A stretch of 64,000 nucleotides of DNA, from IMG/VR virus record IMGVR_UViG_3300028045_000001, positions 175,961 to 239,960 of that record. The stretch is one strand, 5' to 3'. The notes under the pieces are model-generated. The model saw only the letters and a program-made list of their open reading frames with translations, was not told where the DNA came from and ran no database searches. This document shows, in pieces, positions 9,606 through 24,700 of this stretch (position 1 is its first letter; every line of letters begins with the position of its first letter). Position numbers and translations under genes: made by a program.

Positions 9606-9618
9606 ATTTATATATTAC
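9606..9618 (+). promoter_or_regulatory. Candidate early promoter ATTTATATATTAC
   Basis: Identical 13-mer at 11101 and 49392; contains TATATTAC, the published phiKZ early promoter consensus. Confidence 0.6.
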
Positions 9619-9674
9619 AGTAATGATATTAGAAATTACATTTTAAACAACTGTTCAAATGGAGAAAACTATTT

Positions 9675-10740: not shown

Positions 10741-10783
10741 GTGCCTAACAAGTACATAGCAATGCTATGTACTTGTTAGGCAC
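10741..10783. repeat. Perfect inverted repeat, 21-bp stem, 1-nt spacer
   Basis: gtgcctaacaagtacatagca-a-tgctatgtacttgttaggcac. Confidence 0.9.
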
Positions 10784-10814: not shown

Positions 10815-11048
10815 ATGGATAGTTCATACAACGATGGATTCAAAGCTGGAGTTTTAAATGGAAGGGAACAAGTGCTTGAAAACATGAGAGAGATCGCCGC
10901 CACAATTGATGTCTGTAGGGCTTCCTCAAACTACATAGAAAAACAATTACACATTGGGCATTCGACTATGTACGACATATATGAATATAAATCAAATCTA
11001 TTGGATACCTTATTAAATAAAATAGATGGGATGATGGTGGACGACTAA
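10815..11048 (+). CDS. Hypothetical protein
   Basis: 77-aa ORF; N-terminal YNDGFKAG motif is common in small phage proteins. Confidence 0.55.
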   Translation: MDSSYNDGFKAGVLNGREQVLENMREIAATIDVCRASSNYIEKQLHIGHSTMYDIYEYKSNLLDTLLNKIDGMMVDD

Positions 11049-11100
11049 AATAGATGGGGGCAAGTGCCAAGTTATTGATTAGCGCTTATTAGATCTTTTC

Positions 11101-11113
11101 ATTTATATATTAC
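11101..11113 (+). promoter_or_regulatory. Candidate early promoter ATTTATATATTAC
   Basis: Exact copy of the motif, about 50 nt upstream of the first zinc-finger gene. Confidence 0.6.
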
Positions 11114-11161
11114 TACTATGTGTAAGGTATATGTATGTAGTTTTTAATATAGGAGAATAAT

Positions 11162-11353
11162 ATGGAAATATGTCAAGTCGATGGATGTAATAGAAAACAC
11201 TATGTCAAGGGCCATTGTGAAAAACACAATAAAGAAATGCAGATATGCGGCAGGATACTCCCAGTTATAAAGTGTAAGTTCGAAGGATGCGATGAAGAGC
11301 GTTTTAAGGAGGGGTACTGTCATGGATGCTACATGCGGATGTATAAACCATGA
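11162..11353 (+). CDS. Zinc-finger repeat protein, 2 units
   Basis: CQVDGC...GHCEKH and CKFEGC...GYCHGC; RBS AGGAG. Confidence 0.75.
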   Translation: MEICQVDGCNRKHYVKGHCEKHNKEMQICGRILPVIKCKFEGCDEERFKEGYCHGCYMRMYKP

Positions 11354-11378
11354 CAGAATAACATCATAGGAGAATAAT

Positions 11379-12164
11379 ATGAAAATATGTAAGGTTGATG
11401 GATGTGATAGAAAACACCATGCTAAAGGTTACTGTCACAAACATTATCTACAAATACAAAAATATGGCAAGATCCTGCCAGATAGAGTTATAACTGTTGG
11501 ATGTAAAGTCGATAGATGCGATGAAAAGCACCATGCTAAAGGATACTGTAGGAAACACTATCTACAAGTGCAACAACATGGCAAGACCATGTCTGATAGA
11601 GTTAAGCCAGTTGGATGTAAAGTCGATAGATGTGATGGAAAACGCTATGCTAAAGGGTATTGTAGTAGACACTATCGACAAGTGCATAAGCGTGACAAGA
11701 TCCTGCCAGATAGAGTTAAGCCCGTTGGATGTAAAGTCGATAGATGTGACGGAAAACACTATGCTAAAGGGTATTGTAGCAAACATTATCGCCGGATGAG
11801 AAGACATGGTAAGATTCTGCCAGATAGAGTCAAACCCGTTGGATGTACAGTCGATAGATGTAATGAAGAGCGTGTAGCTAAGGGGTATTGTCACAAACAC
11901 TATCATCAGATGCAGAGGAAGGGCAAGCTCCTGCCAGATAGAGTTGTTGGATGTAAAGTTGATGGATGTAAGGGAAAACACTATGCTAAAGGCCACTGTA
12001 GGAAACATTATCTACAAATGCATAGGTACGGTAAGATCCTACCAGATAAAGTCAAACACGTTGGATGTAAATTCAAAGGATGTGATGAAAAATACAAAGC
12101 CAAGGGCTATTGTAATACACATTACAATCAAATATGGCGACTTGGCAAGATCATAGGAGAATGA
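11379..12164 (+). CDS. CCCH zinc-finger tandem-repeat protein, 7 units
   Basis: Seven units of about 38 aa, C-K-V-D-(G/R)-C-x5-AKG-(Y/H)-C-x2-H-Y-x6-GK; very basic; no catalytic domain. Confidence 0.85.
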   Translation: MKICKVDGCDRKHHAKGYCHKHYLQIQKYGKILPDRVITVGCKVDRCDEKHHAKGYCRKHYLQVQQHGKTMSDRVKPVGCKVDRCDGKRYAKGYCSRHYRQVHKRDKILPDRVKPVGCKVDRCDGKHYAKGYCSKHYRRMRRHGKILPDRVKPVGCTVDRCNEERVAKGYCHKHYHQMQRKGKLLPDRVVGCKVDGCKGKHYAKGHCRKHYLQMHRYGKILPDKVKHVGCKFKGCDEKYKAKGYCNTHYNQIWRLGKIIGE

Positions 12165-12165
12165 T

Positions 12166-12600
12166 ATGAAAATATGTAAAGTTAGCTGGTGTGATAGGGG
12201 GCGTGTAGCTAAGGGGTATTGCATTACACACTACCAACAAATGCGGAGGAAGGGGAAGCTCCTACCAGACGGACCCGCAGTATGTAAAGTCGATGGGTGC
12301 GATGGAAAGCACTATGCTAAAGGCTACTGTCAAAAACACTATCTACAAATGCATAAGCGTGGCAAGACCATGCCAGATAGAGTTGCTGAATGTCAAGTCG
12401 ATGGGTGTGATAGAAAACACCATGCTAAAGGGTATTGTAGTAGACACTATCGACAAGTGCAAAAACATGGCAAGACCATGTCTGATAGAGTTATAACTGT
12501 TGGATGTAAAGTTGATGGATGTAAGAGAAAATACTATGCTAAAGGCCACTGTAGTAAACACTATCTACAAATATGGAAGCATGGTGAGATCATAAAATAA
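12166..12600 (+). CDS. CCCH zinc-finger tandem-repeat protein, 4 units
   Basis: Four units of the same motif; its RBS overlaps the stop of the previous paralogue. Confidence 0.85.
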   Translation: MKICKVSWCDRGRVAKGYCITHYQQMRRKGKLLPDGPAVCKVDGCDGKHYAKGYCQKHYLQMHKRGKTMPDRVAECQVDGCDRKHHAKGYCSRHYRQVQKHGKTMSDRVITVGCKVDGCKRKYYAKGHCSKHYLQIWKHGEIIK

Positions 12601-12640
12601 AAGTGTGCACTTAATCACACGCGATAGGAGGTAGTTGGAC

Positions 12641-13120
12641 ATGCACGAATGCATAGGTTCGTCTGTAATCCATGCGATGATGGCAGATGATGACTCGTAT
12701 ATAGCGCAGGAATTGTACGACTATTGCGCCTATAGTTTCGACAGAGATATTTATTTAGAAAGTGTCAATGAAAACTTCGAGATTATTCCTGGACTATTAA
12801 GAACCACTATGCGATCTGATACAGCCACCAATATGTATGTACTGACGGTGCACACTCTATGTGGATATGTGCTCACTATCCATACATCCAATAATTCGGG
12901 GTTACTTGATGCTTCTGGTGGGATCCTACAATTTAAAGACGTGTATATAGGTAAACACATATTGACATATTCTGGTGGATATGTTGGACCCGGTAGAATC
13001 CTCGACATCAAATGGGCTTGTTGCGCCATACCTTACTATGTGGACCTATACATGGACTACGGGATAAACTACCCCATTATTGATGGGGCAATAGTGCCAC
13101 CGATTAAATCAATTCTATAA
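12641..13120 (+). CDS. Stand-alone Hint/intein-like domain protein, paralogue 1
   Basis: ECIGSSVI...MYVLTV...TSNNSGLL...IGKHILT...IIDGAIVP; ATG 12641 is well spaced from GGAGG. Confidence 0.55.
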   Translation: MHECIGSSVIHAMMADDDSYIAQELYDYCAYSFDRDIYLESVNENFEIIPGLLRTTMRSDTATNMYVLTVHTLCGYVLTIHTSNNSGLLDASGGILQFKDVYIGKHILTYSGGYVGPGRILDIKWACCAIPYYVDLYMDYGINYPIIDGAIVPPIKSIL

Positions 13121-13135
13121 GGGAGGACGAATAAC

Positions 13136-13657
13136 GTGACTCACTATGGTACAAAAGAGTCCAAAGTATATGGAACATTATTCGGCGAGAACGAGTACAC
13201 TCTTGAAGATCTATTCGAATACTACTACGTGAGTATGTATGAGACCGATGAGCTCCCATATGCATTCGAGGAACTCGATGTCCCGACGTACATAGACAGT
13301 GTTGACAACAGAGGCTATTTAGTGCCAGCAGCGCTGATGGATATGTACTATGTTGGCGATCACCACTTATGCTACAGGATAACTACACAAGCTAATAATT
13401 ACAATTGTAATATTATTTCAACTAAAACTTCCAGGGACAGTTATTTTGTAGGGGTAGGAGGAGAGCTATTGCACGTGAGCCAATTGCAACAAGGTACTTC
13501 GATATTGGTATGCCCATTCCCTCCAGATGGAAATTTGTCCATAGGAGTGATAAGCGATGTAACTATATTGCCTCCAGAAGAAATATATGGGATAGTATTA
13601 GAGGCCGATGTACAATACTACATCAAGGATGGGTTTGTAGTCCCATCGAACACATAA
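13136..13657 (+). CDS. Stand-alone Hint/intein-like domain protein, paralogue 2
   Basis: YGTKESKV...TLEDL...CYRIT...SRDSYFV...SQLQQGTSIL...ISDV...EEIYGIVL...IKDGFVVPSN follows the intein block A-B-F-G pattern. Confidence 0.65.
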   Translation: MTHYGTKESKVYGTLFGENEYTLEDLFEYYYVSMYETDELPYAFEELDVPTYIDSVDNRGYLVPAALMDMYYVGDHHLCYRITTQANNYNCNIISTKTSRDSYFVGVGGELLHVSQLQQGTSILVCPFPPDGNLSIGVISDVTILPPEEIYGIVLEADVQYYIKDGFVVPSNT

Positions 13658-13673
13658 TAGTTGGAGAATAAAT

Positions 13674-14156
13674 ATGCACTATTGTACCATATGCGCAGAA
13701 GCAACATATGAAAATAGATGGTTATACACCATGTTTGATATAATTGAGATGCTTAAGCAACCGGACAGCTTATTAGTAGATGGAATAAATGCGAACGGAG
13801 AAACTATACTGACACCAGTACTCGGACTTAGTCCTGCTAAAGAAGCATCGTGCTACACCGTGGTAGCCAGAGTAGTACGTGGACTCACATATTCAATGGC
13901 GACGCGCACTTCTTCGGATAGTTATTTTGTTAAACTAGGTGGCGAACTAGTGGCAGTGACCCAACTTAAAGAAGGAGCAACTATATTGATGCATCCATAC
14001 ATGAATGCTTTGACGCCAGGGGTGGTCTTGAGTATTAGCGTAGACCAGATAAGAACAATGTGGGCATTAGAAGTAGACTATAAAACACCATATTACATTA
14101 AAGATGGGTTCGTAGTACCATCAAACAATATATTACAATTGGCCAACATGAGGTGA
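13674..14156 (+). CDS. Stand-alone Hint/intein-like domain protein, paralogue 3
   Basis: CYTVV...SSDSYFVKLGG...TQLKEGATIL...VLSISV...YYIKDGFVVPSN. Confidence 0.62.
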   Translation: MHYCTICAEATYENRWLYTMFDIIEMLKQPDSLLVDGINANGETILTPVLGLSPAKEASCYTVVARVVRGLTYSMATRTSSDSYFVKLGGELVAVTQLKEGATILMHPYMNALTPGVVLSISVDQIRTMWALEVDYKTPYYIKDGFVVPSNNILQLANMR

Positions 14157-14160
14157 TTGA

Positions 14161-14685
14161 ATGTACTATTTATCTGAATGTGAATATTTTCTTCATAGGA
14201 GCAAACGATACGATCTGCCCGAACTAAGTAAACAGACCGAATGTGGCACCATGCCTTCAATACAATTGCTCTCTATTAATAACAATGGTGGATTCCAAAT
14301 AGCCAATATACTGAGTGTGAATCAACTCAGTTACATAGATATACGCTACTTCGTTGCGGTTAGATCGCCTATATGTGAACATGGTCGTAGGGTAGATGAC
14401 ATATTCGCATTGAATGCTGCGCCCAACACTACATTTATTAAATTGGGAGGAGAGCCAATAAGAGCATCTCAATTAAAGAAGGGCCTCGCTATACTAATGT
14501 GTTCTCCGGAATTACAAGTAATAGAGGGGTCTGCTGCTAATGTGGGATACGGTGTGGTGGAGTCTATAACTGAATTACGCGATAGTAACATTTATGGCGT
14601 GGAACTTGAAGCTGACGATATCGCATACAACATTAAGAATAATTTCATTATTGCCAATGCTATGGCCATACAGGCGCTTAACTAA
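14161..14685 (+). CDS. Stand-alone Hint/intein-like domain protein, paralogue 4
   Basis: APNTTFIKLGG...ASQLKKGLAIL...VESITEL...IYGVEL...NNFIIAN. Confidence 0.62.
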   Translation: MYYLSECEYFLHRSKRYDLPELSKQTECGTMPSIQLLSINNNGGFQIANILSVNQLSYIDIRYFVAVRSPICEHGRRVDDIFALNAAPNTTFIKLGGEPIRASQLKKGLAILMCSPELQVIEGSAANVGYGVVESITELRDSNIYGVELEADDIAYNIKNNFIIANAMAIQALN

Positions 14686-14700
14686 TTTGGGGATTTATAA

Positions 14701-15267
14701 ATGTATTACGGAACAGAAGATACTTATGTACATTACAATGGATTAGATGTCACTCTATCAGAACTACATGACCGCAATATGGTCAATGATAGTGGGGGAA
14801 GGCCTATGTCCATTTACGGCATAAGCAAGTACGGCAATCTAATGGCCGCTAATATAGTAGCGACACAGTACGTTGGCGAGCTAATGTGCCGTACGGTGAC
14901 TGCAGTACCTAACGGATATCTTGGTGAAACATGCAGAATAACTATCGCCCATTACAGTTACTTTGTTGGAATTGGGGGACAGTTAATAAAAAGTGCACAG
15001 TTACAAAAAGGCGCGACAGTTGCAGTGTTCCCAAACTACATGTACCTGCCACATGTCCCAAAGAACTTGTGTCGATTTATAACACCTGGAAGAATATCCC
15101 ACATAAGTAAAACATCCATTAAAAAGATATACTGCTTAGCACCATCGACATATATCCCAGTTTTAATTGATAGTGGATTCATCACTTCCCACGACCAATG
15201 GGAGTACTGCAGGGCCTTCCAACAATCACCAATCTACAAAAGAATACAACTTATTGGAAAGGATTAA
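14701..15267 (+). CDS. Stand-alone Hint/intein-like domain protein, paralogue 5
   Basis: YGTEDTYV...TLSEL...AHYSYFVGIGG...SAQLQKGATV...ISHI...KIYCL...DSGFITSH. Confidence 0.62.
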   Translation: MYYGTEDTYVHYNGLDVTLSELHDRNMVNDSGGRPMSIYGISKYGNLMAANIVATQYVGELMCRTVTAVPNGYLGETCRITIAHYSYFVGIGGQLIKSAQLQKGATVAVFPNYMYLPHVPKNLCRFITPGRISHISKTSIKKIYCLAPSTYIPVLIDSGFITSHDQWEYCRAFQQSPIYKRIQLIGKD

Positions 15268-15274
15268 TAAATAT

Positions 15275-15784
15275 ATGTATATGTGCACAAAGGAATCAGT
15301 CGTATATGCAATGGCCCGTGGGGATGGAGCTTACGTGGCATGTAATCTTTTTGACTCGCACAATTGGGACATCAATGAGGGCATATTTATTGAGAGTATA
15401 GACAATGAGTTTGCTCCGATGCCATCTCTGTTGTATGGGATAATAAAGACCGGCAATAAAAGCATATTTTGTGTTGAGATACTCACTGCATCAAAGGTTG
15501 ACATTACGATACACATGTCTATAGACTCATGTTTAATTGATCTCTGTGGAGGTATAATAAAACCTATAAATGTATCTATTGGTAAACATGTGCTAACATT
15601 TAAAGGCACCGTTATTGAACCGGGCGTAATAACTAACATCACGCGGTCCGAGGCAACGATGACATATTGTTTAGATCTGCACTTGGGTGAGGATACCGAA
15701 GAATATGTATGTTATCCGGTGATAGATGGTGTAGTGGTCCCAGCATTTAATCATAGGGATGCATCCAGCAGGGTAGACTTTTAG
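15275..15784 (+). CDS. Stand-alone Hint/intein-like domain protein, paralogue 6
   Basis: MCTKESVV...SIDSCLI...VSIGKHVLT...ITNI...TYCLDL...VIDGVVVP. Start reassigned to ATG 15275, which removes the overlap with paralogue 5. Confidence 0.58.
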   Translation: MYMCTKESVVYAMARGDGAYVACNLFDSHNWDINEGIFIESIDNEFAPMPSLLYGIIKTGNKSIFCVEILTASKVDITIHMSIDSCLIDLCGGIIKPINVSIGKHVLTFKGTVIEPGVITNITRSEATMTYCLDLHLGEDTEEYVCYPVIDGVVVPAFNHRDASSRVDF

Positions 15785-15823
15785 CACTCCGATACTGTCC
15801 ACTGATGGACAGTATCGGAGTGC
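15784..15823. terminator. Bidirectional terminator-like inverted repeat, 18-bp stem, 4-nt loop
   Basis: gcactccgatactgtcca-ctga-tggacagtatcggagtgc between convergent genes; a T-run follows at about 15830. Confidence 0.75.
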
Positions 15824-15839
15824 CGGATATTTTTTTTAT

Positions 15840-17534
15840 TTACTGCAATGCCTCTATCTCTGTCGGTAAGAATGGCCTCGTCAAAGCATATAAGTTTGCT
15901 TTTGTAAATCCATTATGTTCGAACCTAAGTTTCCTATCTGGCGTTATAACTCCATTCAGTGAGAATAAGAAATCTTCTATGTTTTTATTTGCCTCTGTGG
16001 TTAGTATAGCGGAGCCATTGAGTGCATCGCCATCATAGTCAGCGTCAAAAGTACTTAAGGTTCCAGGATGAACGATCATCGAATCTACATATCCGTTACC
16101 GATTATTGGGTAATGGGGAAGTGTTATGAATACATCTGGATCGAACATAGTCGTTAGCCTAACCAATCTATCTGGCTTCGTGGTCGCAACTCTTATCCTT
16201 GGAGTTATAGTGTTATCGTCATTAGTTACTGGGTATCTGGTACATAGGCCATGTTTTCCTTTTGTGGCATGAAATGCAACTATGTAGAACATCTCGATGT
16301 AAGTTAACGGTCGTATATAGCTCTTATCTATATCGCCTTCACGATATGTCGATAACTCATTTATATCCCTAAAGATTATAACTTGCTCACCATCATCATA
16401 GACATTATAAATGTTCCATGTCTTACCATCAAGATCTTCCAGAGTAACGTTACTTGCTCTAAACGAGGCATCCTCAAATCTTTTAATGGTAGTACTAATT
16501 CCGTCAGAAGATACAAATCGATCTCGCATTTTTGGGGATATTTCAGTATAATGTAAGGACAGGCTCTTTGGGTCAATTACAGGTATCTGAGTAGAGGTTT
16601 CTTGCACCACCTGATTAAAGAACATTCTTTTAAGATAGTATATAGCTATCGGTTGAGTTACATTTATTGATTGTAGTGTCCCCATAATACACTCGTGGGA
16701 TTTCAACATCCTAGGATCAGTCGGAGAGTCTCCCGCTATTGTTGCAGCACTGATCACATTTCTTGCGCCATGTACTATACTTCGTTTTTGAAATTTGTCT
16801 TGAGCCCAACCATGTTTGTCGCTCATGAAATTCGTATAGTAATCAAAGATCTCATTAGCCTTTCTTTGGATAGCGTATCTAACAGTATCATATACTGGAT
16901 TTACTTTATAACTACCAGACGGCAAAGCCTGTGATAAGGCTATCAATGACATATATAGTTTGTTGGCATCGTCGTAGTTATCGATGTCGCCCATATTAAT
17001 ATCTCTGATGCCGGCCATCATAATTAGATATTTGTCGATATGCATACTTTCTATATGGTTATCTATCAGCTTTACTTTATAGCTCCGCTGTAAAGATTTG
17101 CTCGCTTTAAATTTTATTTTTTGTACATACTCCATAAAGAAACTATATCCTGTGCGAGCACGCTCGTCCTCTCTATCGATTTTAATTAAATCGCCAACTT
17201 CTTCATCAAAGTATGCAAAAGTATTACTCGACATTATTTCTCCGTATAATTTTTTTAGGGAGAGGAGGGTCTTGTATATTTTTGGATGAAATATCTTTGT
17301 CCTAAGGTTTATGTAGCCAAAATTTAACATCCTTTCAGGAGAACCTATTTCCCCAAAAATAGTTTGACTGAATAATCCATTTGGATCTAATTCATTGCTG
17401 GAGGGGACACGTATAAATTGTGAGGTAACTTCCCCAATATTGTTTTCTTTTATGTATTTGTCTACATCAAGTAAAGCTATTTTATACGGTTCTTTAGTGT
17501 CAGTGATTGTTGGCTCTTCTATTTGTATACTCAT
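15840..17534 (-). CDS. rpoC: RNA polymerase beta' subunit, N-terminal catalytic part (probably virion RNAP, phiKZ gp180-like)
   Basis: PNGLFSQTIFG...FGYINL N-terminal motif, RYP motif and catalytic HPGTLSTFDADYDGD (NADFDGD variant). Confidence 0.9.
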   Translation of the reverse strand: MSIQIEEPTITDTKEPYKIALLDVDKYIKENNIGEVTSQFIRVPSSNELDPNGLFSQTIFGEIGSPERMLNFGYINLRTKIFHPKIYKTLLSLKKLYGEIMSSNTFAYFDEEVGDLIKIDREDERARTGYSFFMEYVQKIKFKASKSLQRSYKVKLIDNHIESMHIDKYLIMMAGIRDINMGDIDNYDDANKLYMSLIALSQALPSGSYKVNPVYDTVRYAIQRKANEIFDYYTNFMSDKHGWAQDKFQKRSIVHGARNVISAATIAGDSPTDPRMLKSHECIMGTLQSINVTQPIAIYYLKRMFFNQVVQETSTQIPVIDPKSLSLHYTEISPKMRDRFVSSDGISTTIKRFEDASFRASNVTLEDLDGKTWNIYNVYDDGEQVIIFRDINELSTYREGDIDKSYIRPLTYIEMFYIVAFHATKGKHGLCTRYPVTNDDNTITPRIRVATTKPDRLVRLTTMFDPDVFITLPHYPIIGNGYVDSMIVHPGTLSTFDADYDGDALNGSAILTTEANKNIEDFLFSLNGVITPDRKLRFEHNGFTKANLYALTRPFLPTEIEALQ

Positions 17535-18434: not shown

Positions 18435-18445
18435 GGAGTTTGATT

Positions 18446-21400
18446 ATGTCTGATGAAATATTTGGGGACGACACCTCGGGCGATGACGTCATGTTTGATT
18501 TCGAGGACGATCTTACTGACGACCGTAAAGCGGTCAGCTTACCAAAGGCCATTACAAAAACAGCGTTTCAGGGTTTAACAAAAGGATCCACCGCTGGAAT
18601 ACGTGCCGGTATATCGAATGTTCTTCCAGAAGTAGGTGCCGTTGCTGCAGATTTTATCAGTGAAAAAGACAATGCATTACAGACCATAACTGACGTTCAA
18701 GACGAAGGTTCAGAAGCCTTCTTGTCGATTAAAAAAACTACTGAGAAACTCCTGCCGAGAGCTAAGAGCTTTATACCTAAGCGGATATACGATGTGATGA
18801 GTGACTTCGCTACATCTTATGAGCCTGAAGTCGATTCCGCAGCAGAGGTAACGGAAGAAGATCAGCGGGAACTTGATATAGCTGATCGATTGGCTACTAT
18901 CTTTTCCATAAAAGCCGAACAAGAAAGAGATTTAGCAGTAACCGAAAATCTGGAAACTAATATAAGCAGACAGTTAGACTTAAACATGCATAGTTCTAGG
19001 ATGAGTGTCGCCAAACAAACAGCATTCTCACTTAGAAATATAGCGGACTTTTCGTACAACCAAACAATGGCATACATGAAAGAATCTTTGTATGCTAAAT
19101 GGCGACATATTTATATCTCCAAAGATATTCTTAGCTCTATCAAAATACTTACTGGAATGAGTGAGAAGAATCTAAGAATTATATCTAAGAATACTGGATT
19201 GCCCGATATACAAAAGAAACGGTTATTAGAGTCACTTAAAGAAACTTCTGTTGGTGGCCTATCCTCCTCAATAAGTGGAAAAGTAAGTGGGTATGCCGGT
19301 AGAGTGTTGTCTAAATTAAAAGATGATGCACTGTCCCCAGGCATAGAACTTATGGGCGGGATAGCCGATGCAGGCGACGCTACAAATGAGCTACTTGAAA
19401 TGCAGGACTCCATGAGGGACATGGGCGACGACGACGGTGGGCTGGCTGGAATGGCAGCTGGAGCTGGAGCCGGTGGGATCGGATCGTTGTTGGGTAGATC
19501 ATTTATAAGTAAGAAATTGCAAGAAATTTTTGATACAAGATCTCTAAATGAAACTGTAGGTAACATAAAAACCAAGGGGATATTGGGGTTAGGGGATATT
19601 GCAGAACGAGGTGGGCTAATTGGAACGCTGGCTGCAAGCTTACCTGGATTGTCTGAGGAAAGTAACATACTCAAAGCCAAAGAAGAGGTGGACGACGGCG
19701 GTGTTCGTCTTGCTACAGTGGAGGTTATCCCTGGACTGCTAAGTAGAATACTGCAAGAAATAAATGCGCTAAGAATTGGAGAGGTTAGTGAGTTACAAGT
19801 TTATGATCCAAAGGCATCGGAATTTGTAGATGCAAGTGAACGTAAGCAACGTATGGTCACTCAGATATTCGGTGATAGAGACATACGGGCAGAACGAGCA
19901 GCAGATGCGATCGGTACTCTGAAAGCAGCGTTCCTTCAATCAAAAGACGACGATATCGATATAGAGGAATTCGATGATCTTAGTTTAGATATGGCCAGAG
20001 TAGCAAATAATATGGCCCATAGTGAGACCCTACTTAAGCCAAAGAAATTAATTGAGTACAATGAAGACCCATCAAATGTTAGTTTCTATATGAGTAAACT
20101 TATAGATGGGGTAGAGAATCCAGAAGAAGTTGTTAATACTATCCTACAATCTGTGACCGATGGGACAGGGGATATCTTAAAATCGACCGTAGGCATATTC
20201 AATAATAAAATTATTAATATGATGAATCGAGCTTCGCATCTTGATCTAATACAGAAGATGTGGGACAGTGAGTCCGGCGAGGTAATGAAAGACTTGCGGG
20301 ATACGTCCGGTAAGATAAGTCAAAAATTTATATCAGAAAGTTTTTCCGATATTGATAAAGAGACCTTCGCCAAACAAACAACCAATCGGGTTGAATTGCT
20401 GTCTAAAGAAATAGAAGGTTCAGTTGCTAACAAGAATAAAGTAAAACATAGCGTACGATCCACTGCCCTTAAAGGGGCCGAATTGGTAATGTCAGACGAT
20501 AGGTTTGAGAGTTTCTTTCTTGAACATATTAGAAACAGTGAGTTTAAAAAAGAAGCTGCCGATATAATCGATGCCGTTAATTCCGATCCAGACATACTTG
20601 GAAGAGATAGATTTAAAGTAATACGGGATCGCATAGAGCAAGTAATCGACGCCAAGTATCCATCTTCTCCTGGCATAAAAGAAAGTCTCGGGAGAGCGTT
20701 GGATGGATTGAAGTTGGCACCGACCTACATTAAGGGGGCCGTCAAGCGAGTGATCTCTCCTTCTTATGCTAAAATGATAAGTGGCATAAGTGAAGAAGTC
20801 TTGCAGACTTCAGTTAGAGACATAGTCAATTCCGTATTACTTGACCAGACTATTCCAGTTAAGGATCAGATCAACGCGATACGTTCCAGAGTTACTGAAT
20901 TGTTAAGTCAGGATATATATCGAGAAGATCGTCCAAGACTCACAAGAGAGTTCGATGTAGCTTTACGAAAAATACGTCTTTCTTCTTATGACGACGAGGG
21001 CCAGTTGAAGGAGCACTCTCGTAATATATTTGATAAATCCGACCCTATCAACGTTGTTCTTGATAGGACCCAACGTGAGAACGAAGCAAAATTAAACGAA
21101 GAGTACGATAATGTACTGTCCGGTATGTCTGTAGTAGTGGAGGAATCCATTGCTGCTATAAATGAAAAACTTAACACCGCCGCTGATGGGATCAAAGATA
21201 GGGTAGCTCAAGCAGATGACAAGTATGGAGTTAGCGAACGAGTACATTCCATTAAAGATGTTGTACGCAATAGAGTTGACCAACTTAAGGACAATGTAAA
21301 AGATAGCAGTGAGGCAGTCGACGAGTCCATTACAAATGCAGCTTCTGAGAATGAACTTGCTCCCGAAGCAGATTCATTTGCAGCTGTGGATAAATTGTTG

Positions 21401-24400
21401 GAAGATTCAAGAAATATAAACGAGCAGATTGCAGAACTCAAAGATAAGTTAGGTATAGATAAGCTCATTCCGGCCGTCGGTTCCACCATCAAGGAACTGC
21501 GGGGCATATTGCATGTTACAACGGAAGACCTCGAAGTGTCCGACGATGATAAAGTCGTCGATGCGATGGAGATAGTCCAACCGACTTCAATAGAACTTCC
21601 GCAAAGACTAACAGACTTTTTAACAACAGTCGCGAAAAAAACTGAGGACATAAAAGAGAACGTAATTCAGCCGGCACAGGAGCAGGCACGGACTCGAGTT
21701 CAGAGTATGAAAGACTTCTTATCCACTACAGTTAGTGTAGAGGACACTGGAAATGAGATAGCTGGATTTGTTCGTGAGATTGCAGAGACTGTCGCTGAAC
21801 ATGGAGAGCCCGATCTAACTCAAGGAGAAGAAACAGAAACAGCCGTAGATCACCTCAGTAGTGTAAAGGATACAAATGAGAAAATAGTTAGCATCCTATC
21901 CGAAAGTAGTGATAGTCGGGGCGGTAGAGAGCTTCTTGATAGTGTTCTTCAAATACAGAAGAACGTTATGACGTTGTCCTCCAAAGAACATACTCTTGAG
22001 TGGAAGGATGCGCTAAAGGAAGTTCATTATAGTTCAGAGAATCCAATTGTATCTGGCCTAAATGAAATTGTACATAGATTGAATACCCTGAATGAAACCT
22101 TTACAGGTAGTGAACAACTCACATCGCAAGATGGAGATGGTACTTCTCCTAAATCTAAGAAACGTGGGGTATTTGGTATCATGCAGGATGGGTTTAACTC
22201 TGTTGGATCCATTGCGGCGGCAGGGGCTAAAGGATATGCCTCTCTATATGGCAACTTAATTAAATCAAGTGGATCTGCTGCTGGATCGATACTCGAAGGT
22301 GGTGGGAACCTACTCGGCAAAGCAGGTGAATTAGCCGGCAAAGCATTACCTGGCGCATTCAATATGTACAAAGATGTTCTAACAGGAACCATCGGTGCCA
22401 CTACAACAGGTGCATCTAAAATACTTGGCTCAGTTTTTGGAAGAGGAGGGAAAGTCGAGCCATTTGTAAATGTATACCTTAAGGATAGTATAGACCCAGG
22501 CAATCCGCTGTTATCAAAGAGGCTGCAGAAAAAAGGAGTCTTCTTTGAGGATGGGAGTGAACTAGAAGCATCAGATGAAATAACGGAACCTATCTTTAAT
22601 ACCGATGGAGAAGTTCTTGTAACTGAGGAAGATATCGATACTGGACTTGTGGACGTAGATAATAACCCATTAGGAACAAAATCAGTATTTGATAAAGTTA
22701 CAACGAAGGGCGGAGGAACAATCGGCAAACTCTTTGGTGGGCTAAAAGACATCGGAGGCTTACTCGCCGGAAAAGCGTTACCCGCGTATTACAAAGGTAT
22801 ATTTGGATTGGGATCATCCTTGGTTAAGGGCGGAACCGATATGGTCTCTGGACTGTTCGGTGTCCGGTCCAATAAAAAGGATCTCGAGACCATCGTAGGA
22901 ACTAGGCTGGACGCGATCTTAGATATAATAGACACACGTACAGAGACCATTATAGAGTCCATGAAAAAGGATGAAACAAAATCTATATTCGGTGATACAG
23001 ATGGCGATGGCGACGTAGAGGGCTCGTACAAGGATAGACTTGGAAAAACTAAATCGAAGTCTAAGACTTCATCAGAAGTAAGGAACGCTATTGCCCGCAA
23101 AACAAACATAACCCAGAAAAAACCTGGCATTGCGGCTAAGGCTGGTATATTGAGTTCGATAGCTGGTGGTGCTGGATACTTAGCGAGGAGTGCTGGTCGT
23201 AAGTTGGGACTCAGTGATAAACAAAGCGAAGTTGCTGGGTTAGCCGGTGGTGGGACAGCGATGGGCGTAGCCGGACTTGGTGCAACTGGGGTCGGACGCA
23301 AGGCGATGACTACCGTTGGTAGACAATTAGGGAAGACTGCTCTTTCAATCGGAGGGCGAGTACTCGCTACTGGTGCTGCAACTGGCATGGGAAGTGCAGC
23401 TATGGGTGGACTGGCTACAGCTGGCGGGGCATTGGCAACAGGTGCCGCTTCTATAGCTGCTTCTCCAGTGTTGTTGGCTGGTCTTGCTGCTGCTGGCGTT
23501 GGGGCTGTCGGGTATGGTCTCTATAAGCATTTAACTAAGGACAAAAGTATTAAAGAAGGCAATGATCTTGCACGACTCATGGTCGATCAAGGATTCATGC
23601 ATGATGGAATAGGTTGGGCAGATTGGGATCTTACAGAAGAAGGCGAAGAAGCGATCCAAATGAGCTTCGATAAAAAAGAATTAGAAATTCTAATGAAATC
23701 GGATAAGATTTCTGATGAAGCTAAGGAATATATACAAGCTCGTTTGGATAATTGGGAAGCTATCATACGTCTAAGAAAAAAAAGTGACCCTAACCGTAAG
23801 ATCAGTAGTAAGGTAGATGATATTACAAAGGCCAGTGATGAAAAGATTAAAGACCGTGAGGAGAGTGGCGAATTTAAAGGGAAGATAAAAGCAGCATTAA
23901 AGGAAAGTGCTATATTCGCTTTGGGTCCCACTGCAGTAGCGGCAGCTGGAATATATAAATATTTTTCTAGAGGAGACGAAGTAAAAAACGCTAACGAATT
24001 TGCGAGGAAGATGGTGGATTCTGGACTTCTTCATGATGGCTGGGGCTGGGCAGATTGGAGTTTAACGGAAGATGGCAAAGAAGCCGTGTCGACAACATTC
24101 ACAATTGAAGAGCTTAAGCTACTCATTGACTCCGATCAAATTGATGATGATGCTAAGGAATTTATACAGGCGCAGCTTGATAAATTGGAGTTAAAATCAG
24201 CCAAGAGATTAGATCCGAAGAAGATCAAACTATCTAATTTAAACAAAACATATGTGAACGAATCAGGGGCAATTGATCCGTTTAAAGTTCCAGTGAATAA
24301 GGATATCATTGGTGCGGATCGAGTTCCTAACTCTTTATCTTTTAATGATCCAAGTAATACGTCTGTATACGGCCAAGCCACTGTTGCGGCGAATGATGCA

Positions 24401-24700
24401 ACTATAAAAGAACAACCAATTGTAGTTAACACTAACACCGACAATACTGAACTTATAAATGCAATAAGGGAACAAACCTCGGTGATGTCCGGCAAACTTG
24501 GCAACATAGCAGACAATACTTTAGAAGCGGCCAATAAAGAGATCAAGGTCGATGTTCTTGTACCGGCCGATAACGGATCAAAGAATCCAGTACCCCCACA
24601 GGTGGGGATACATGAGATAGATAAGACTACTTCTAAAGTAGTTAGAACACAAACTCTCTCTACCATGAAGGAGGCGGCCACGCCTCCATTGTTCAGCTAA
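18446..24700 (+). CDS. Large tail-associated/tape-measure-like protein (phiKZ gp181-like)
   Basis: About 2084 aa, helical, with Gly/Ala-rich hydrophobic stretches and a DTDGDGD motif; sits next to the vRNAP beta' gene and a lysozyme gene, as gp181 does. Confidence 0.7.
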   Translation: MSDEIFGDDTSGDDVMFDFEDDLTDDRKAVSLPKAITKTAFQGLTKGSTAGIRAGISNVLPEVGAVAADFISEKDNALQTITDVQDEGSEAFLSIKKTTEKLLPRAKSFIPKRIYDVMSDFATSYEPEVDSAAEVTEEDQRELDIADRLATIFSIKAEQERDLAVTENLETNISRQLDLNMHSSRMSVAKQTAFSLRNIADFSYNQTMAYMKESLYAKWRHIYISKDILSSIKILTGMSEKNLRIISKNTGLPDIQKKRLLESLKETSVGGLSSSISGKVSGYAGRVLSKLKDDALSPGIELMGGIADAGDATNELLEMQDSMRDMGDDDGGLAGMAAGAGAGGIGSLLGRSFISKKLQEIFDTRSLNETVGNIKTKGILGLGDIAERGGLIGTLAASLPGLSEESNILKAKEEVDDGGVRLATVEVIPGLLSRILQEINALRIGEVSELQVYDPKASEFVDASERKQRMVTQIFGDRDIRAERAADAIGTLKAAFLQSKDDDIDIEEFDDLSLDMARVANNMAHSETLLKPKKLIEYNEDPSNVSFYMSKLIDGVENPEEVVNTILQSVTDGTGDILKSTVGIFNNKIINMMNRASHLDLIQKMWDSESGEVMKDLRDTSGKISQKFISESFSDIDKETFAKQTTNRVELLSKEIEGSVANKNKVKHSVRSTALKGAELVMSDDRFESFFLEHIRNSEFKKEAADIIDAVNSDPDILGRDRFKVIRDRIEQVIDAKYPSSPGIKESLGRALDGLKLAPTYIKGAVKRVISPSYAKMISGISEEVLQTSVRDIVNSVLLDQTIPVKDQINAIRSRVTELLSQDIYREDRPRLTREFDVALRKIRLSSYDDEGQLKEHSRNIFDKSDPINVVLDRTQRENEAKLNEEYDNVLSGMSVVVEESIAAINEKLNTAADGIKDRVAQADDKYGVSERVHSIKDVVRNRVDQLKDNVKDSSEAVDESITNAASENELAPEADSFAAVDKLLEDSRNINEQIAELKDKLGIDKLIPAVGSTIKELRGILHVTTEDLEVSDDDKVVDAMEIVQPTSIELPQRLTDFLTTVAKKTEDIKENVIQPAQEQARTRVQSMKDFLSTTVSVEDTGNEIAGFVREIAETVAEHGEPDLTQGEETETAVDHLSSVKDTNEKIVSILSESSDSRGGRELLDSVLQIQKNVMTLSSKEHTLEWKDALKEVHYSSENPIVSGLNEIVHRLNTLNETFTGSEQLTSQDGDGTSPKSKKRGVFGIMQDGFNSVGSIAAAGAKGYASLYGNLIKSSGSAAGSILEGGGNLLGKAGELAGKALPGAFNMYKDVLTGTIGATTTGASKILGSVFGRGGKVEPFVNVYLKDSIDPGNPLLSKRLQKKGVFFEDGSELEASDEITEPIFNTDGEVLVTEEDIDTGLVDVDNNPLGTKSVFDKVTTKGGGTIGKLFGGLKDIGGLLAGKALPAYYKGIFGLGSSLVKGGTDMVSGLFGVRSNKKDLETIVGTRLDAILDIIDTRTETIIESMKKDETKSIFGDTDGDGDVEGSYKDRLGKTKSKSKTSSEVRNAIARKTNITQKKPGIAAKAGILSSIAGGAGYLARSAGRKLGLSDKQSEVAGLAGGGTAMGVAGLGATGVGRKAMTTVGRQLGKTALSIGGRVLATGAATGMGSAAMGGLATAGGALATGAASIAASPVLLAGLAAAGVGAVGYGLYKHLTKDKSIKEGNDLARLMVDQGFMHDGIGWADWDLTEEGEEAIQMSFDKKELEILMKSDKISDEAKEYIQARLDNWEAIIRLRKKSDPNRKISSKVDDITKASDEKIKDREESGEFKGKIKAALKESAIFALGPTAVAAAGIYKYFSRGDEVKNANEFARKMVDSGLLHDGWGWADWSLTEDGKEAVSTTFTIEELKLLIDSDQIDDDAKEFIQAQLDKLELKSAKRLDPKKIKLSNLNKTYVNESGAIDPFKVPVNKDIIGADRVPNSLSFNDPSNTSVYGQATVAANDATIKEQPIVVNTNTDNTELINAIREQTSVMSGKLGNIADNTLEAANKEIKVDVLVPADNGSKNPVPPQVGIHEIDKTTSKVVRTQTLSTMKEAATPPLFS

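What the first reader, a model, noticed from the sequence alone, without database searches (positions are those of the whole stretch)
11101..15823. Zinc-finger arrays and pseudo-Hint proteins form one promoter-to-terminator unit (candidate new early system)
Seen in sequence: an exact ATTTATATATTAC motif at 11101 precedes nine co-oriented, tightly packed genes (gaps of 1-40 nt). They end at the hairpin at 15784, with no internal palindrome or motif copy found by eye. Both gene families are locally amplified and diversified, which is typical of phage-host arms-race loci. Inference: a co-expressed early cassette in which variable nucleic-acid readers and variable Hint-fold binders may act together or against a common host system.
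Basis: inference. Interest (0 to 1): 0.75.

Follow-up and report, generated by a model that had tools for sequence, protein, structure and literature searches.

The report
Early operon of domesticated homing-element parts
A marine phiKZ-like jumbo phage has a nine-gene unit behind one early-type promoter that encodes three nuclease-less zinc-finger arrays and six splicing-dead, free-standing intein-like (Hint) proteins; the parts are real and unusual, but nothing shows the two families work together.

Summary
The window is the last 64 kb of a 239,960-bp seawater phage genome that encodes phiKZ-type RNA polymerase subunits. ATTTATATATTAC at 11101 belongs to a longer motif with 48 plus-strand copies and 1 minus-strand copy genome-wide. 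Its core is the phiKZ early-promoter core TATATTAC. Nine co-oriented genes follow, each with a ribosome-binding site, separated by gaps of 1-34 nt. They end at an 18-bp hairpin at 15784-15823. No second promoter copy or long perfect hairpin lies inside.

Genes 1-3 carry 2, 7 and 4 copies of a C-x4-C-x9-C-x2-H finger. The closest relatives are the N-terminal arrays of HNH-AP2 homing endonucleases, but no nuclease domain is present here.

Genes 4-9, plus a seventh copy elsewhere in the genome, have the Hint fold. Their profile hits ThyX and RecA mini-inteins, and all top 50 PDB fold matches are inteins or their kin. They lack the block-B histidine, a conserved terminal asparagine and any extein.

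The proposed functional link between the families is not supported. None of 54 finger loci from other viruses carries a Hint copy. Two Hint homologues, one in this genome, sit in a locus with no finger gene. No RNA data were listed. Function remains inferred: early, non-catalytic DNA binders and protein-binding scaffolds.

The parts
11096..11120 (+). Early-type promoter. Core ATTTATATATTAC lies at 11101-11113, with a T-rich upstream part and a conserved ATG at 11118-11120 that probably overlaps the transcription start.
   Evidence: Exact motif. Matrix score 36.4, one of 48 + strand sites against 1 - strand site genome-wide. Same core as the phiKZ early promoter TATATTAC. Jumbo-phage early promoters are AT-rich 10-mers centred near -10. 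The start site is inferred, not measured.
11162..11353 (+). Gene 1: 63 aa, two zinc fingers (the second is CCCC), pI 8.4.
   Evidence: PHROG 1271 'HNH endonuclease', N-terminal region, E 4.5e-7.
11317..11356 (+). Imperfect hairpin across the stop codon of gene 1, with no U-tract. It could be an attenuator or RNA-stability element, or it could be chance.
   Evidence: 18-nt arms, 83% complementary. dG -19.2 kcal/mol, z -3.6, 0 of 200 shuffles fold as well.
11379..12164 (+). Gene 2: 261 aa, seven C-x4-C-x9-C-x2-H fingers, pI 9.8, no nuclease domain.
   Evidence: PHROG 5351 E 9.7e-74; Pfam DUF5763 E 8e-9. 114-nt tandem period, 10.8 copies across genes 2 and 3. Closest relatives are five-finger HNH_3/AP2-type endonucleases.
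12166..12600 (+). Gene 3: 144 aa, four fingers, pI 9.7. It starts 1 nt after the stop of gene 2 with the same MKICKV start and RBS, so it is a gene duplicate.
12635..13120 (+). Gene 4: free-standing dead-Hint protein of subfamily A, 161 aa (159 aa if the ATG at 12641 is used), pI 4.5.
   Evidence: Paralogue alignment. Tree groups gene 4 with gene 9 and P0008, support 95/93.
13136..13657 (+). Gene 5: dead-Hint protein of subfamily B, 173 aa, GTG start, pI 4.2, ends ...PSN-T.
   Evidence: AlphaFold2 model with pLDDT 74.8 and pTM 0.73. All top 50 PDB matches are inteins, BIL or Hedgehog Hint domains, best E 3.2e-7. BFVD and ESM Atlas agree.
13674..14156 (+). Gene 6: dead-Hint protein of subfamily B, 160 aa.
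14161..14685 (+). Gene 7: dead-Hint protein of subfamily B, 174 aa, the most divergent copy.
14701..15267 (+). Gene 8: dead-Hint protein of subfamily B, 188 aa, the only basic member (pI 8.9).
15275..15784 (+). Gene 9: dead-Hint protein of subfamily A, 169 aa from the ATG 'MYMCT'. The longer TTG ORF from 15167 overlaps gene 8 and is unlikely to be the real start.
15784..15837 (.). Terminator hairpin (18-bp stem, 4-nt loop, 15784-15823) plus a T8 run at 15830-15837. It lies between the convergent gene 9 and the RNA polymerase gene and is probably bidirectional.
   Evidence: dG -34.6 (+ strand) and -36.0 (- strand) kcal/mol, z -10.3 and -11.5. It is one of 79 long perfect hairpins in the genome.
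10741..10783 (.). Context: upstream 21-bp perfect hairpin, a probable terminator of the unit started at 9609. The 77-aa gene at 10815-11048 lies between this hairpin and the cassette promoter.
   Evidence: dG -39.8, z -9.3.
15840..17534 (-). Context: gene for a phiKZ-type RNA polymerase beta-prime fragment (contains DADYDGD), convergent with the cassette.
   Evidence: About 30% identity to RNAP subunits of Psa21, PA1C, Ea35-70 and others; 314 phage records matched.

Best explanation
This is a polycistronic unit of a marine phiKZ-like jumbo phage. It is most likely transcribed early by the virion RNA polymerase, from the promoter at about 11101 to the hairpin at 15784.

It encodes two lineage-specific gene expansions, each built from a module that normally belongs to a selfish homing element.

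(1) Three basic proteins consist only of 2, 7 and 4 CCCH zinc fingers. This finger type forms the DNA-recognition array at the N-terminus of HNH/AP2 homing endonucleases, but no nuclease is present here. They most likely bind specific DNA sequences without cutting, acting as repressors, roadblocks or site occluders.

(2) Six mostly acidic proteins are free-standing mini-intein (Hint) folds. They have lost the residues needed for splicing or cleavage and have no extein. They most likely serve as non-catalytic protein- or peptide-binding scaffolds aimed at host or competitor targets.

Shown: the gene layout, the motif statistics, the domain identities, the missing catalytic residues and purifying selection on the fingers. 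Inferred: early timing, co-transcription, DNA binding and the binder role of the Hint proteins. Adjacency is the only link between the two families.
For: Promoter and unit:
- The motif is strongly strand-biased and intergenic.
- Its core is identical to the phiKZ early promoter. Its position and type fit virion-RNAP early promoters as reviewed.
- No other matrix hit and no perfect hairpin of 11 bp or more lies inside the unit.
- About 25 of the genome's 79 long hairpins sit 17-70 nt upstream of such promoters, which suggests that these hairpins end transcription units.
- All nine genes have an RBS and short gaps.

Fingers:
- PHROG 5351 E 9.7e-74, PHROG 1271 and Pfam DUF5763.
- 354 relatives were found; the best 120 were listed, and about half of those carry HNH_3, HNH, Endonuclease_7 or AP2 domains; three others carry sigma-70 region 4 or HTH_7.
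- The best relatives, P0020 and P0021, have five fingers followed by an HNH_3 and AP2-like C-terminus.
- The phage's own genome has no match to the HNH_3 or HNH models.
- The proteins are basic, pI 8.4-9.8.
- Zinc ligands are invariant. Variation is concentrated at positions 20, 24, 27 and 29, a spacing of 3-4 that puts them on one face of a helix after the Cys-x2-His.
- dN/dS between repeats is 0.26 overall and 0.16 at framework positions.

Hint family:
- The profile hits ThyX and RecA mini-inteins over the whole domain, E 1e-8 to 7e-4, and Pfam calls Intein_splicing on the same stretches.
- The Npu DnaE intein is the top PDB sequence match.
- The model has a Hint fold, with TM-score up to 0.80.
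- The block-B His is replaced by Ser, Thr or Gly in all nine members. The terminal Asn is kept only in genes 5 and 6. Residue 1 is Cys in four of the nine members in the alignment (genes 4, 6, 9 and P0008).
- All seven copies in this genome are intact ORFs despite 9-32% identity. Two subfamilies have outside homologues, P0008 and P0010.
- P0010 sits behind a hairpin and an identical ATTTATATATTACTACTATG promoter.
Against: - There is no transcript or timing data; no RNA run was listed.
- Read-through from the upstream promoter at 9609 is not excluded, and an imperfect internal hairpin exists at 11317-11356.
- Zinc and DNA binding are not demonstrated. The finger model was of low confidence (pLDDT 60), and no solved structure of this finger was found by sequence.
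- No function is known for any catalytically dead free-standing Hint protein, so the 'binding scaffold' role is a default inference.
- The host is unknown. A phiKZ nuclear-shell homologue was not detected (inconclusive), so it is unclear which DNA the fingers could reach.
Confidence: 0.6

Rival explanations
1. One reading: the finger arrays and the Hint proteins form one functional system. They would interact physically, for example with acidic Hint proteins acting as adaptors, antagonists or chaperones of the basic finger proteins, or they would attack one host pathway together.
For: Both families share one promoter-to-terminator unit with tight spacing. Their net charges are opposite: pI 8.4-9.8 for the fingers and 4.2-5.3 for five of the six Hint proteins. 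Both are expanded only in this phage.
Against: None of 54 finger loci in IMG/VR (764 kb) has a Hint-family ORF within 10 kb. The seventh paralogue (L009) and its homologue P0010 are solitary genes with their own promoter and no finger neighbour. The 45 residues left of P0008's upstream neighbour are not a finger. Finger arrays also occur alone in bacteria and other phages. The complex prediction scored 0.01, which the tool says counts as no evidence either way.
Confidence: 0.12
2. The finger arrays are anti-homing 'immunity' proteins. As nuclease-less copies of a homing endonuclease's DNA-recognition array, made early, they would occupy the endonuclease's target sites in the phage's own genome. 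That would protect it from HNH endonucleases of co-infecting jumbo phages.
For: The closest relatives are multi-finger HNH-AP2 homing endonucleases. The cassette is convergent with an RNA polymerase gene. In a relative with 41% RNAP identity (L074), the same slot holds an HNH homing endonuclease gene (PHROG 374, E 1.7e-96). In phiKZ an HNH endonuclease gene, gp56, follows the RNAP gene gp55. An HNH endonuclease that targets a virion-RNAP gene mediates competition between PhiPA3 and PhiKZ (PMC11620839).
Against: No target site is known. The fingers lie 3.2-4.7 kb from the RNAP gene, with the Hint genes in between. No such protective mechanism has been described. It does not explain the Hint genes.
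Confidence: 0.1
3. The cassette is decaying debris of homing elements, a broken HNH endonuclease and an excised intein, with no function for the phage.
For: Both families derive from selfish-element modules that have lost their catalytic parts. The locus is a landing site for an HNH gene in a relative. The cassette is absent from the nearest relatives.
Against: Nine intact ORFs with ribosome-binding sites lie behind a consensus promoter. The fingers are under purifying selection: dN/dS 0.26 with dS about 0.9. The seven Hint paralogues in this genome stay open at 9-32% identity. The subfamilies are conserved as free-standing genes in other metagenomic phages, one of them behind the same promoter. 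The sequence is identical in four seawater samples.
Confidence: 0.1
4. The Hint proteins are still active autoprocessing domains of the BIL or class-3 intein kind. They would cleave off their short N-terminal peptide or attach themselves to a target.
For: Cys aligns with intein residue 1 in genes 4, 6, 9 and P0008, and Ser in P0010 and L009. Genes 5 and 6 end in PSN, like the ASN end of DnaE inteins, and gene 5 has Thr at position +1.
Against: The block-B histidine is absent in all nine members. Residue 1 is Gly or Leu in genes 5, 7 and 8. The terminal Asn is missing in seven of nine. Only structural residues (Gly120, Ile142, Tyr151 in gene 5 numbering) are near-invariant. The N-terminal 'extein' is only 2-5 residues long.
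Confidence: 0.05

Closest known systems
N-terminal zinc-finger arrays of phage HNH / HNH-AP2 homing endonucleases (PHROG 5351 and 1271; Pfam DUF5763 PF19067)
   Same: Same finger unit (C-x4-C ... AKGYC-x2-HY, about 36-38 aa) in tandem. The best relatives are 42-53% identical over five fingers.
   Different: There is no HNH, Endonuclease VII or AP2 domain. The proteins end right after the last finger, and the genome has no match to the HNH or HNH_3 models. Seven fingers in one protein is at the high end; other viral loci mostly have 1-4, and one has 9. Nuclease-less arrays are not unique, since about half of the listed relatives carry no recognised nuclease domain.
Mini-inteins (Pfam Intein_splicing PF14890), e.g. 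ThyX and RecA mini-inteins, the Mtu RecA intein 3IFJ and the Npu DnaE intein 4KL5
   Same: Same Hint fold and block order over the whole domain. Detectable by profile (E 1e-8) and by structure (E 3e-7, TM-score up to 0.8).
   Different: They are free-standing genes that start 2-5 residues before intein position 1 and end within 1-25 residues after the last strand. There is no extein and no block-B His, and neither the terminal Asn nor the +1 nucleophile is conserved. There are seven paralogues in one genome. Only two free-standing relatives turned up among 1.84 billion representatives.
Bacterial intein-like (BIL) and Hedgehog Hint domains
   Same: Same fold, used outside classical splicing; both appear among the fold matches (2LWY, 6Y75, 1AT0).
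   Different: BIL and Hedgehog domains keep catalytic residues and act on an attached polypeptide. These proteins have neither.
phiKZ-type early promoters and early operons read by the virion RNA polymerase
   Same: Identical core TATATTAC, AT-rich, upstream of clusters of small genes of unknown function, strongly strand-biased.
   Different: The extended consensus (upstream TCA and T-tract, downstream ATG) is specific to this phage lineage, and no transcript data exist for it.
Intron or free-standing HNH homing endonucleases at RNA polymerase genes of chimalliviruses (PhiPA3 gp210; phiKZ gp56)
   Same: The genomic neighbourhood is the same: next to an RNAP subunit gene. A relative has an HNH gene in the same slot.
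   Different: Here only a DNA-recognition module remains. No nuclease and no intron were detected.
Lineage-specific expansion of zinc ribbons in Bacillus phage G (Iyer et al. 2021, PMC7824862)
   Same: A jumbo phage with many copies of a small zinc module, proposed there to act as specific transcription factors or structural DNA binders.
   Different: The zinc module is different. There the copies are separate small proteins; here they form tandem arrays within three proteins.

Membership tests
Intein (self-splicing Hint domain) | Hint fold | tested here: met
   AlphaFold2 model of gene 5, pLDDT 74.8. All top 50 PDB matches are inteins, BIL or Hedgehog Hint domains. The profile hits Intein_splicing regions.
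Intein (self-splicing Hint domain) | Nucleophile (Cys/Ser/Thr) at intein position 1 | tested here: inconclusive
   Cys in genes 4, 6, 9 and P0008; Ser in L009 and P0010; Gly or Leu in genes 5, 7 and 8. The residue is not conserved across the family.
Intein (self-splicing Hint domain) | Block B T-x-x-H histidine | tested here: not met
   The aligned position is Ser, Thr or Gly in all nine free-standing members, and His in the four real inteins. The Npu DnaE alignment agrees that the His is missing (it pairs it with Asp).
Intein (self-splicing Hint domain) | C-terminal Asn followed by a Cys/Ser/Thr extein residue | tested here: not met
   Only genes 5 and 6 end the last strand with SN, and only gene 5 has Thr next. 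The other seven lack the Asn.
Intein (self-splicing Hint domain) | Inserted in frame within a host protein (exteins on both sides) | tested here: not met
   These are stand-alone ORFs of 159-188 aa with their own RBS, 2-5 residues before position 1 and 1-25 residues after the last strand.
HNH homing endonuclease | N-terminal CCCH finger repeats of the PHROG 5351/1271 type | tested here: met
   E 9.7e-74 and 2.6e-52 for gene 2. 13 fingers mapped.
HNH homing endonuclease | HNH (beta-beta-alpha-metal) nuclease domain | tested here: not met
   There is no Pfam HNH, HNH_3 or HNH_5 hit in genes 1-3. A six-frame search of the whole genome with PF13392 and PF01844 found nothing at E <= 1, while control genomes matched.
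phiKZ-type early (virion RNAP) promoter | Conserved AT-rich motif of about 10 nt upstream of gene clusters, strand-specific and intergenic | tested here: met
   The core equals the phiKZ TATATTAC.
phiKZ-type early (virion RNAP) promoter | Transcripts start about 6-10 nt downstream, early in infection and independent of the host RNAP | not testable with these tools
   The phage is uncultured (seawater metagenomes), and no RNA run was listed.
Single operon | Co-oriented genes with short gaps and no internal promoter or terminator signal | tested here: met
   Gaps are 1-34 nt. No matrix hit scores 8 or more inside the unit. No perfect hairpin of 11 bp or more lies inside. Caveat: the imperfect hairpin at 11317-11356.
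Single operon | One continuous transcript | not testable with these tools
   No RNA data.
Two-family functional system (fingers plus Hint) | Conserved co-occurrence of the two families in other genomes | tested here: not met
   0 of 54 finger loci. Hint homologues L009 and P0010 have no finger gene in the locus read; the 45 residues left of P0008's upstream neighbour are not a finger. Relatives G001 and L074 lack both families. The test is limited because no close relatives are available.

The most novel reading that the evidence does not exclude
The cassette could be a new kind of early counter-measure assembled entirely from disarmed homing-element parts. The nuclease-less finger arrays would occupy specific DNA sites, for example to shield the phage's own RNA polymerase genes or other conserved genes from HNH homing endonucleases of co-infecting jumbo phages, or to silence host loci. 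The diversified dead-Hint proteins would act as specific adaptors or inhibitors that pair with them or with competitor and host proteins. That would make splicing-dead inteins a new class of phage effector scaffold.
Probability: 0.1. Interest if true: 0.8.

Novelty: new variant of a known kind. Interest (0 to 1): 0.45.

Why it matters
Inteins and homing endonucleases are usually seen as selfish passengers. Here both of their non-catalytic modules, the DNA-reading fingers and the Hint fold, appear as intact, expanded families. The fingers show measurable purifying selection. Both families sit behind a consensus early promoter of a jumbo phage. If the proteins are functional, this would be a clear case of a phage domesticating homing-element parts. 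It would also give a first handle on what a catalytically dead, free-standing Hint domain does. The finger arrays, with invariant zinc ligands and variation on one helix face, are also a candidate natural modular DNA-reading scaffold whose structure has not been solved.

Tried and rejected
- Megablast of the cassette against 50,697 phage records found no match.
- A word-based protein search with gene 5 returned only itself and a paralogue.
- Relatives were sought through the RNA polymerase gene. IMG/VR gave one record at 30% identity (G001) with neither family. JGI metagenomes gave the phage's own contig, a 41% relative (L074) with neither family in 21 kb, and a 3.7-kb fragment. The rest of the 106-kb L074 record could not be searched because it is not held.
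- NCBIfam found nothing for any of the ten proteins. Pfam and PHROGs found nothing for the Hint proteins or for the three upstream genes.
- The AlphaFold2 model of a two-finger unit had pLDDT 60, too low for a fold search, so none was run. PDB sequence searches with the fingers gave only weak TFIIIA and FGF matches, which I rejected as pattern matches.
- The complex prediction for gene 3 plus gene 5 gave no answer.
- I considered a common origin from an HNH-bearing intein. The HNH-containing ThyX inteins hit by the profile (P0017, P0019) have no such fingers. None of the 56 viral finger ORFs or their neighbours has a Hint domain. The idea is not supported.
- Four seawater DNA runs hold the phage with identical sequence. 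Assemblies break inside the finger repeats, and no informative variants were seen. No RNA run was listed.
- Rfam found only a spurious miRNA hit on the 10741 hairpin, and there are no tRNAs.
- The phiKZ nuclear-shell protein does not match the genome. This is inconclusive, so nucleus formation is not claimed.
- The sigma-70 promoter scan found no more sites than in shuffled sequence.

Full report
**Where the window comes from**

The window is bases 175,961-239,960 of a 239,960-bp viral record with direct terminal repeats, rated complete. Four seawater metagenomes hold the same sequence. The only large minus-strand gene near the finding, at 15840-17534, encodes a fragment of a multisubunit RNA polymerase beta-prime with the DADYDGD metal motif. 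It is about 30% identical to subunits of Psa21, PA1C, Ea35-70 and 300 other phiKZ-like jumbo phages. There is no DNA-level match to any deposited phage. The phage is therefore a deep-branching, uncultured, phiKZ-like jumbo phage. A direct search with the phiKZ nuclear-shell protein found nothing. That result is inconclusive, so I do not claim nucleus formation.

**The promoter motif is real**

- ATTTATATATTAC is exact at 11101. The window has 3 exact and 2 one-mismatch copies against 0.51 expected.
- Genome-wide, TATATATTAC occurs 32 times on the plus strand and 3 times on the minus strand. The reversed control occurs once and zero times.
- Aligning the sites shows a longer consensus: an upstream TCA, a T-tract, TTATATATTAC, and a conserved ATG five bases downstream.
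- A weight matrix built from the sites finds 48 plus-strand sites and one minus-strand site. 45 of the 48 lie outside large ORFs, at a median of 60 nt before the next ATG ORF.
- The core is identical to the published phiKZ early-promoter core TATATTAC (PMC7058600).
- The review of jumbo-phage RNA polymerases describes such AT-rich 10-mers centred near -10 as early promoters read by the virion polymerase (PMC7598289).
- In the window the matrix finds only 1754, 9609, 11104 and 49395. The cassette therefore has exactly one such site. A bare TATATTAC at 14129 lacks all of the context and is best read as chance. Eighteen of the 50 genomic copies of the 8-mer lack the flanking TA of the seed motif, 11 of them on the minus strand.

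**The unit**

- Nine plus-strand genes follow with gaps of 25, 1, 34, 15, 16, 4, 15 and 7 nt, each behind a Shine-Dalgarno-like sequence.
- The ninth gene most likely starts at the ATG at 15275 ('MYMCT', like the 'MHYCT' and 'MYYGT' starts of its paralogues), not at the overlapping TTG at 15167.
- Its stop codon overlaps the first base of an 18-bp perfect hairpin at 15784-15823 (dG about -35 kcal/mol, z about -10 on either strand). A T8 run follows.
- The genome holds 79 perfect hairpins of 11 bp or more. About 25 of them lie 17-70 nt upstream of an early-type promoter, and most lack a U-tract. Long hairpins therefore seem to be this phage's usual punctuation between units. None lies inside the cassette.
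- Caveat 1: an imperfect 18-nt-arm hairpin spans the stop codon of gene 1 (11317-11356; dG -19.2, z -3.6).
- Caveat 2: the nearest upstream hairpin is at 10741-10783, with a 77-aa gene between it and the promoter. Read-through from the promoter at 9609 cannot be excluded.
- No RNA run was listed for this sequence, so co-transcription and timing remain inferences.

**The finger genes**

- Genes 1-3 (63, 261 and 144 aa; pI 8.4, 9.8 and 9.7) contain 2, 7 and 4 units of C-x4-C-x9-C-x2-H, each about 36-38 residues. They form a 114-nt tandem array of 10.8 copies across genes 2 and 3.
- Each gene begins with M-x-I-C at its first finger, behind a near-identical RBS. They are duplicated genes rather than one broken gene.
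- They match the N-terminal parts of PHROG families annotated as HNH endonuclease (E 9.7e-74) and Pfam DUF5763.
- 354 relatives were found; the best 120 were listed, and about half of those carry HNH_3, HNH, HNH_5 or Endonuclease_7 domains, often with AP2. A few carry sigma-70 region 4 or a resolvase HTH. The rest have no recognised second domain.
- The two closest relatives have five fingers followed by an HNH_3-like and an AP2-like C-terminus.
- In genes 1-3 nothing follows the last finger. A six-frame search of the whole genome with the HNH_3 and HNH models found nothing, while control genomes matched.
- Across the 13 fingers the zinc ligands and the AKGYC...HY frame are invariant or nearly so. 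Variability peaks at positions 11, 13-14 and at 20, 24, 27 and 29. That spacing puts the latter four on one face of the helix that begins at the Cys-x2-His.
- Pairwise dN/dS between repeats is 0.26 overall, 0.16 at framework positions and 0.74 at the variable positions. The variable positions were chosen after the fact, so this is no evidence of positive selection. dS is about 0.9, so the repeats are old and constrained.
- The two-finger model was of low confidence (pLDDT 60; a short hairpin plus a helix per finger). No solved structure matches by sequence.

**The Hint genes**

- Genes 4-9 (159-188 aa) are paralogues at 13-32% identity. They have no Pfam, PHROG or NCBIfam match.
- A seventh copy lies at genome position 133386-133883, behind its own copy of the promoter.
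- A profile of the seven, run against 1.84 billion representative proteins, found 19 proteins. These were the seven themselves, two free-standing outsiders (P0008, 157 aa; P0010, 178 aa), and proteins bearing inteins or Hint repeats. Most are ThyX and RecA proteins in which the matched stretch is the mini-intein. Pfam calls Intein_splicing on exactly those stretches.
- The best PDB sequence match is the Npu DnaE intein, aligned end to end.
- The AlphaFold2 model of gene 5 (pLDDT 74.8; low only in an acidic insertion at residues 15-47) matches inteins, BIL domains and Hedgehog Hint domains in all top 50 PDB hits. The best E-value is 3.2e-7 and TM-scores reach 0.80. BFVD and the ESM Atlas give the same answer.
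- Alignment with four real mini-inteins shows what is missing:
  - The block-B histidine is Ser, Thr or Gly in all nine free-standing members.
  - The C-terminal Asn survives only in genes 5 and 6.
  - Position 1 is Cys in four members, Ser in two, and Gly or Leu in three.
  - The proteins begin 2-5 residues before position 1 and end shortly after the last strand.
- Only structural residues are near-invariant. These are splicing-dead, extein-less Hint domains, so 'pseudo-Hint' is a fair name.
- A tree gives three well-supported subfamilies: genes 4 and 9 with P0008; genes 5-8; and the seventh copy with P0010. The expansion therefore predates the split from the phages that carry P0008 and P0010.
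- P0010's 1.7-kb contig shows a hairpin and then the identical ATTTATATATTACTACTATG promoter directly upstream. That is independent support that this family is expressed from early-type promoters.
- BFVD also lists a few small free-standing Hint proteins in other phages (143-172 aa). The architecture is therefore not unprecedented, although this family is very rare.

**Are the two families linked?**

I found no support beyond adjacency.

- 54 IMG/VR loci carrying finger proteins (764 kb with flanks) contain no ORF matching the Hint profile at E <= 0.01. The same profile detects ordinary mini-inteins.
- Finger arrays also occur alone in a bacterial chromosome and in another phage.
- The seventh Hint copy and P0010 have no finger gene in the locus read. 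The 45 residues left of P0008's upstream neighbour are not a finger.
- The nearest relatives by RNA polymerase lack both families. One is a complete genome at 30% identity. The other is a contig at 41% identity, of which 21 kb was examined.
- The gene 3 plus gene 5 complex prediction scored 0.01, which the tool itself says is no evidence either way.
- The opposite charges of the two families are suggestive only.

**Origin and locus**

In the 41% relative, the slot convergent with the RNA polymerase gene holds a 350-aa homing-endonuclease-like gene with a different zinc-ribbon repeat (PHROG 374, E 1.7e-96). In phiKZ an HNH endonuclease gene directly follows an RNAP subunit gene. An intron-encoded HNH endonuclease at a virion-RNAP gene mediates competition between PhiPA3 and PhiKZ (PMC11620839). 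The neighbourhood is thus a known landing zone for homing endonucleases. That fits the idea that the fingers descend from such a gene that lost its nuclease. A single HNH-intein ancestor for both families is not supported.

**Conclusion**

The best explanation is an early-promoter-driven operon that carries two old, constrained expansions of disarmed homing-element modules: non-cutting DNA-reading finger arrays and non-splicing Hint scaffolds. The claim that they form one system, or are caught in an arms race, has no support so far. Function is inferred from domain ancestry, charge and expression signals only.

Noticed in passing
whole genome (G000); in the window e.g. 1649, 5549, 9537, 10741, 15784, 27292, 32082, 40112, 42963, 44711, 52723: The genome has 79 perfect hairpins with stems of 11-22 bp. 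About 25 sit 17-70 nt upstream of an early-type promoter, giving a regular terminator-then-promoter punctuation. Most have no U-tract, so termination by this phage's polymerases may depend on the hairpin alone.
   Followed up: partly
promoter consensus, e.g. window 11101-11121, 9606-9626: The early-type promoter consensus includes a conserved ATG (tattATGa) five bases after TATATTAC. It recalls the T-A-T-G element that overlaps the start site of phiKZ late promoters. It may mark the transcription start.
   Followed up: no
L074:12295-13347 (-), contig FRDC01002128.1: A relative with 41% RNAP identity carries a 350-aa HNH-endonuclease-like gene in the slot convergent with its RNA polymerase gene. 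It has three copies of a different zinc-ribbon repeat (C-x-C-x-C ... SCGC) and matches PHROG 374 at E 1.7e-96. The slot looks like a hot spot for homing-type genes.
   Followed up: partly
window 10815-11048: A 77-aa acidic ORF sits between a strong hairpin (10741-10783) and the cassette promoter. It has no early-type promoter of its own, so how it is expressed is unclear; read-through or another promoter class are possible.
   Followed up: no
window 15840-17534 (-): The RNA polymerase beta-prime fragment gene is the only long minus-strand gene in a window that is otherwise almost entirely plus-strand. No adjacent partner fragment lies on the same strand.
   Followed up: no
window 11657-11676 and 12432-12451: Assemblies of the public metagenome runs break inside the finger repeats. 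Low-depth contigs 80-85% alike from the same samples map onto the fingers, so other finger-bearing genes are present in those communities.
   Followed up: no
window 18440-24700, 27399-31496, 34979-40072: Three very large plus-strand ORFs (2086, 1365 and 1697 aa) lie downstream of the finding. They were not examined.
   Followed up: no
window 14129-14136: A bare TATATTAC core lies at the 3' end of gene 6 without the extended promoter context (matrix score below 8). It is probably chance but could be a weak internal start.
   Followed up: partly
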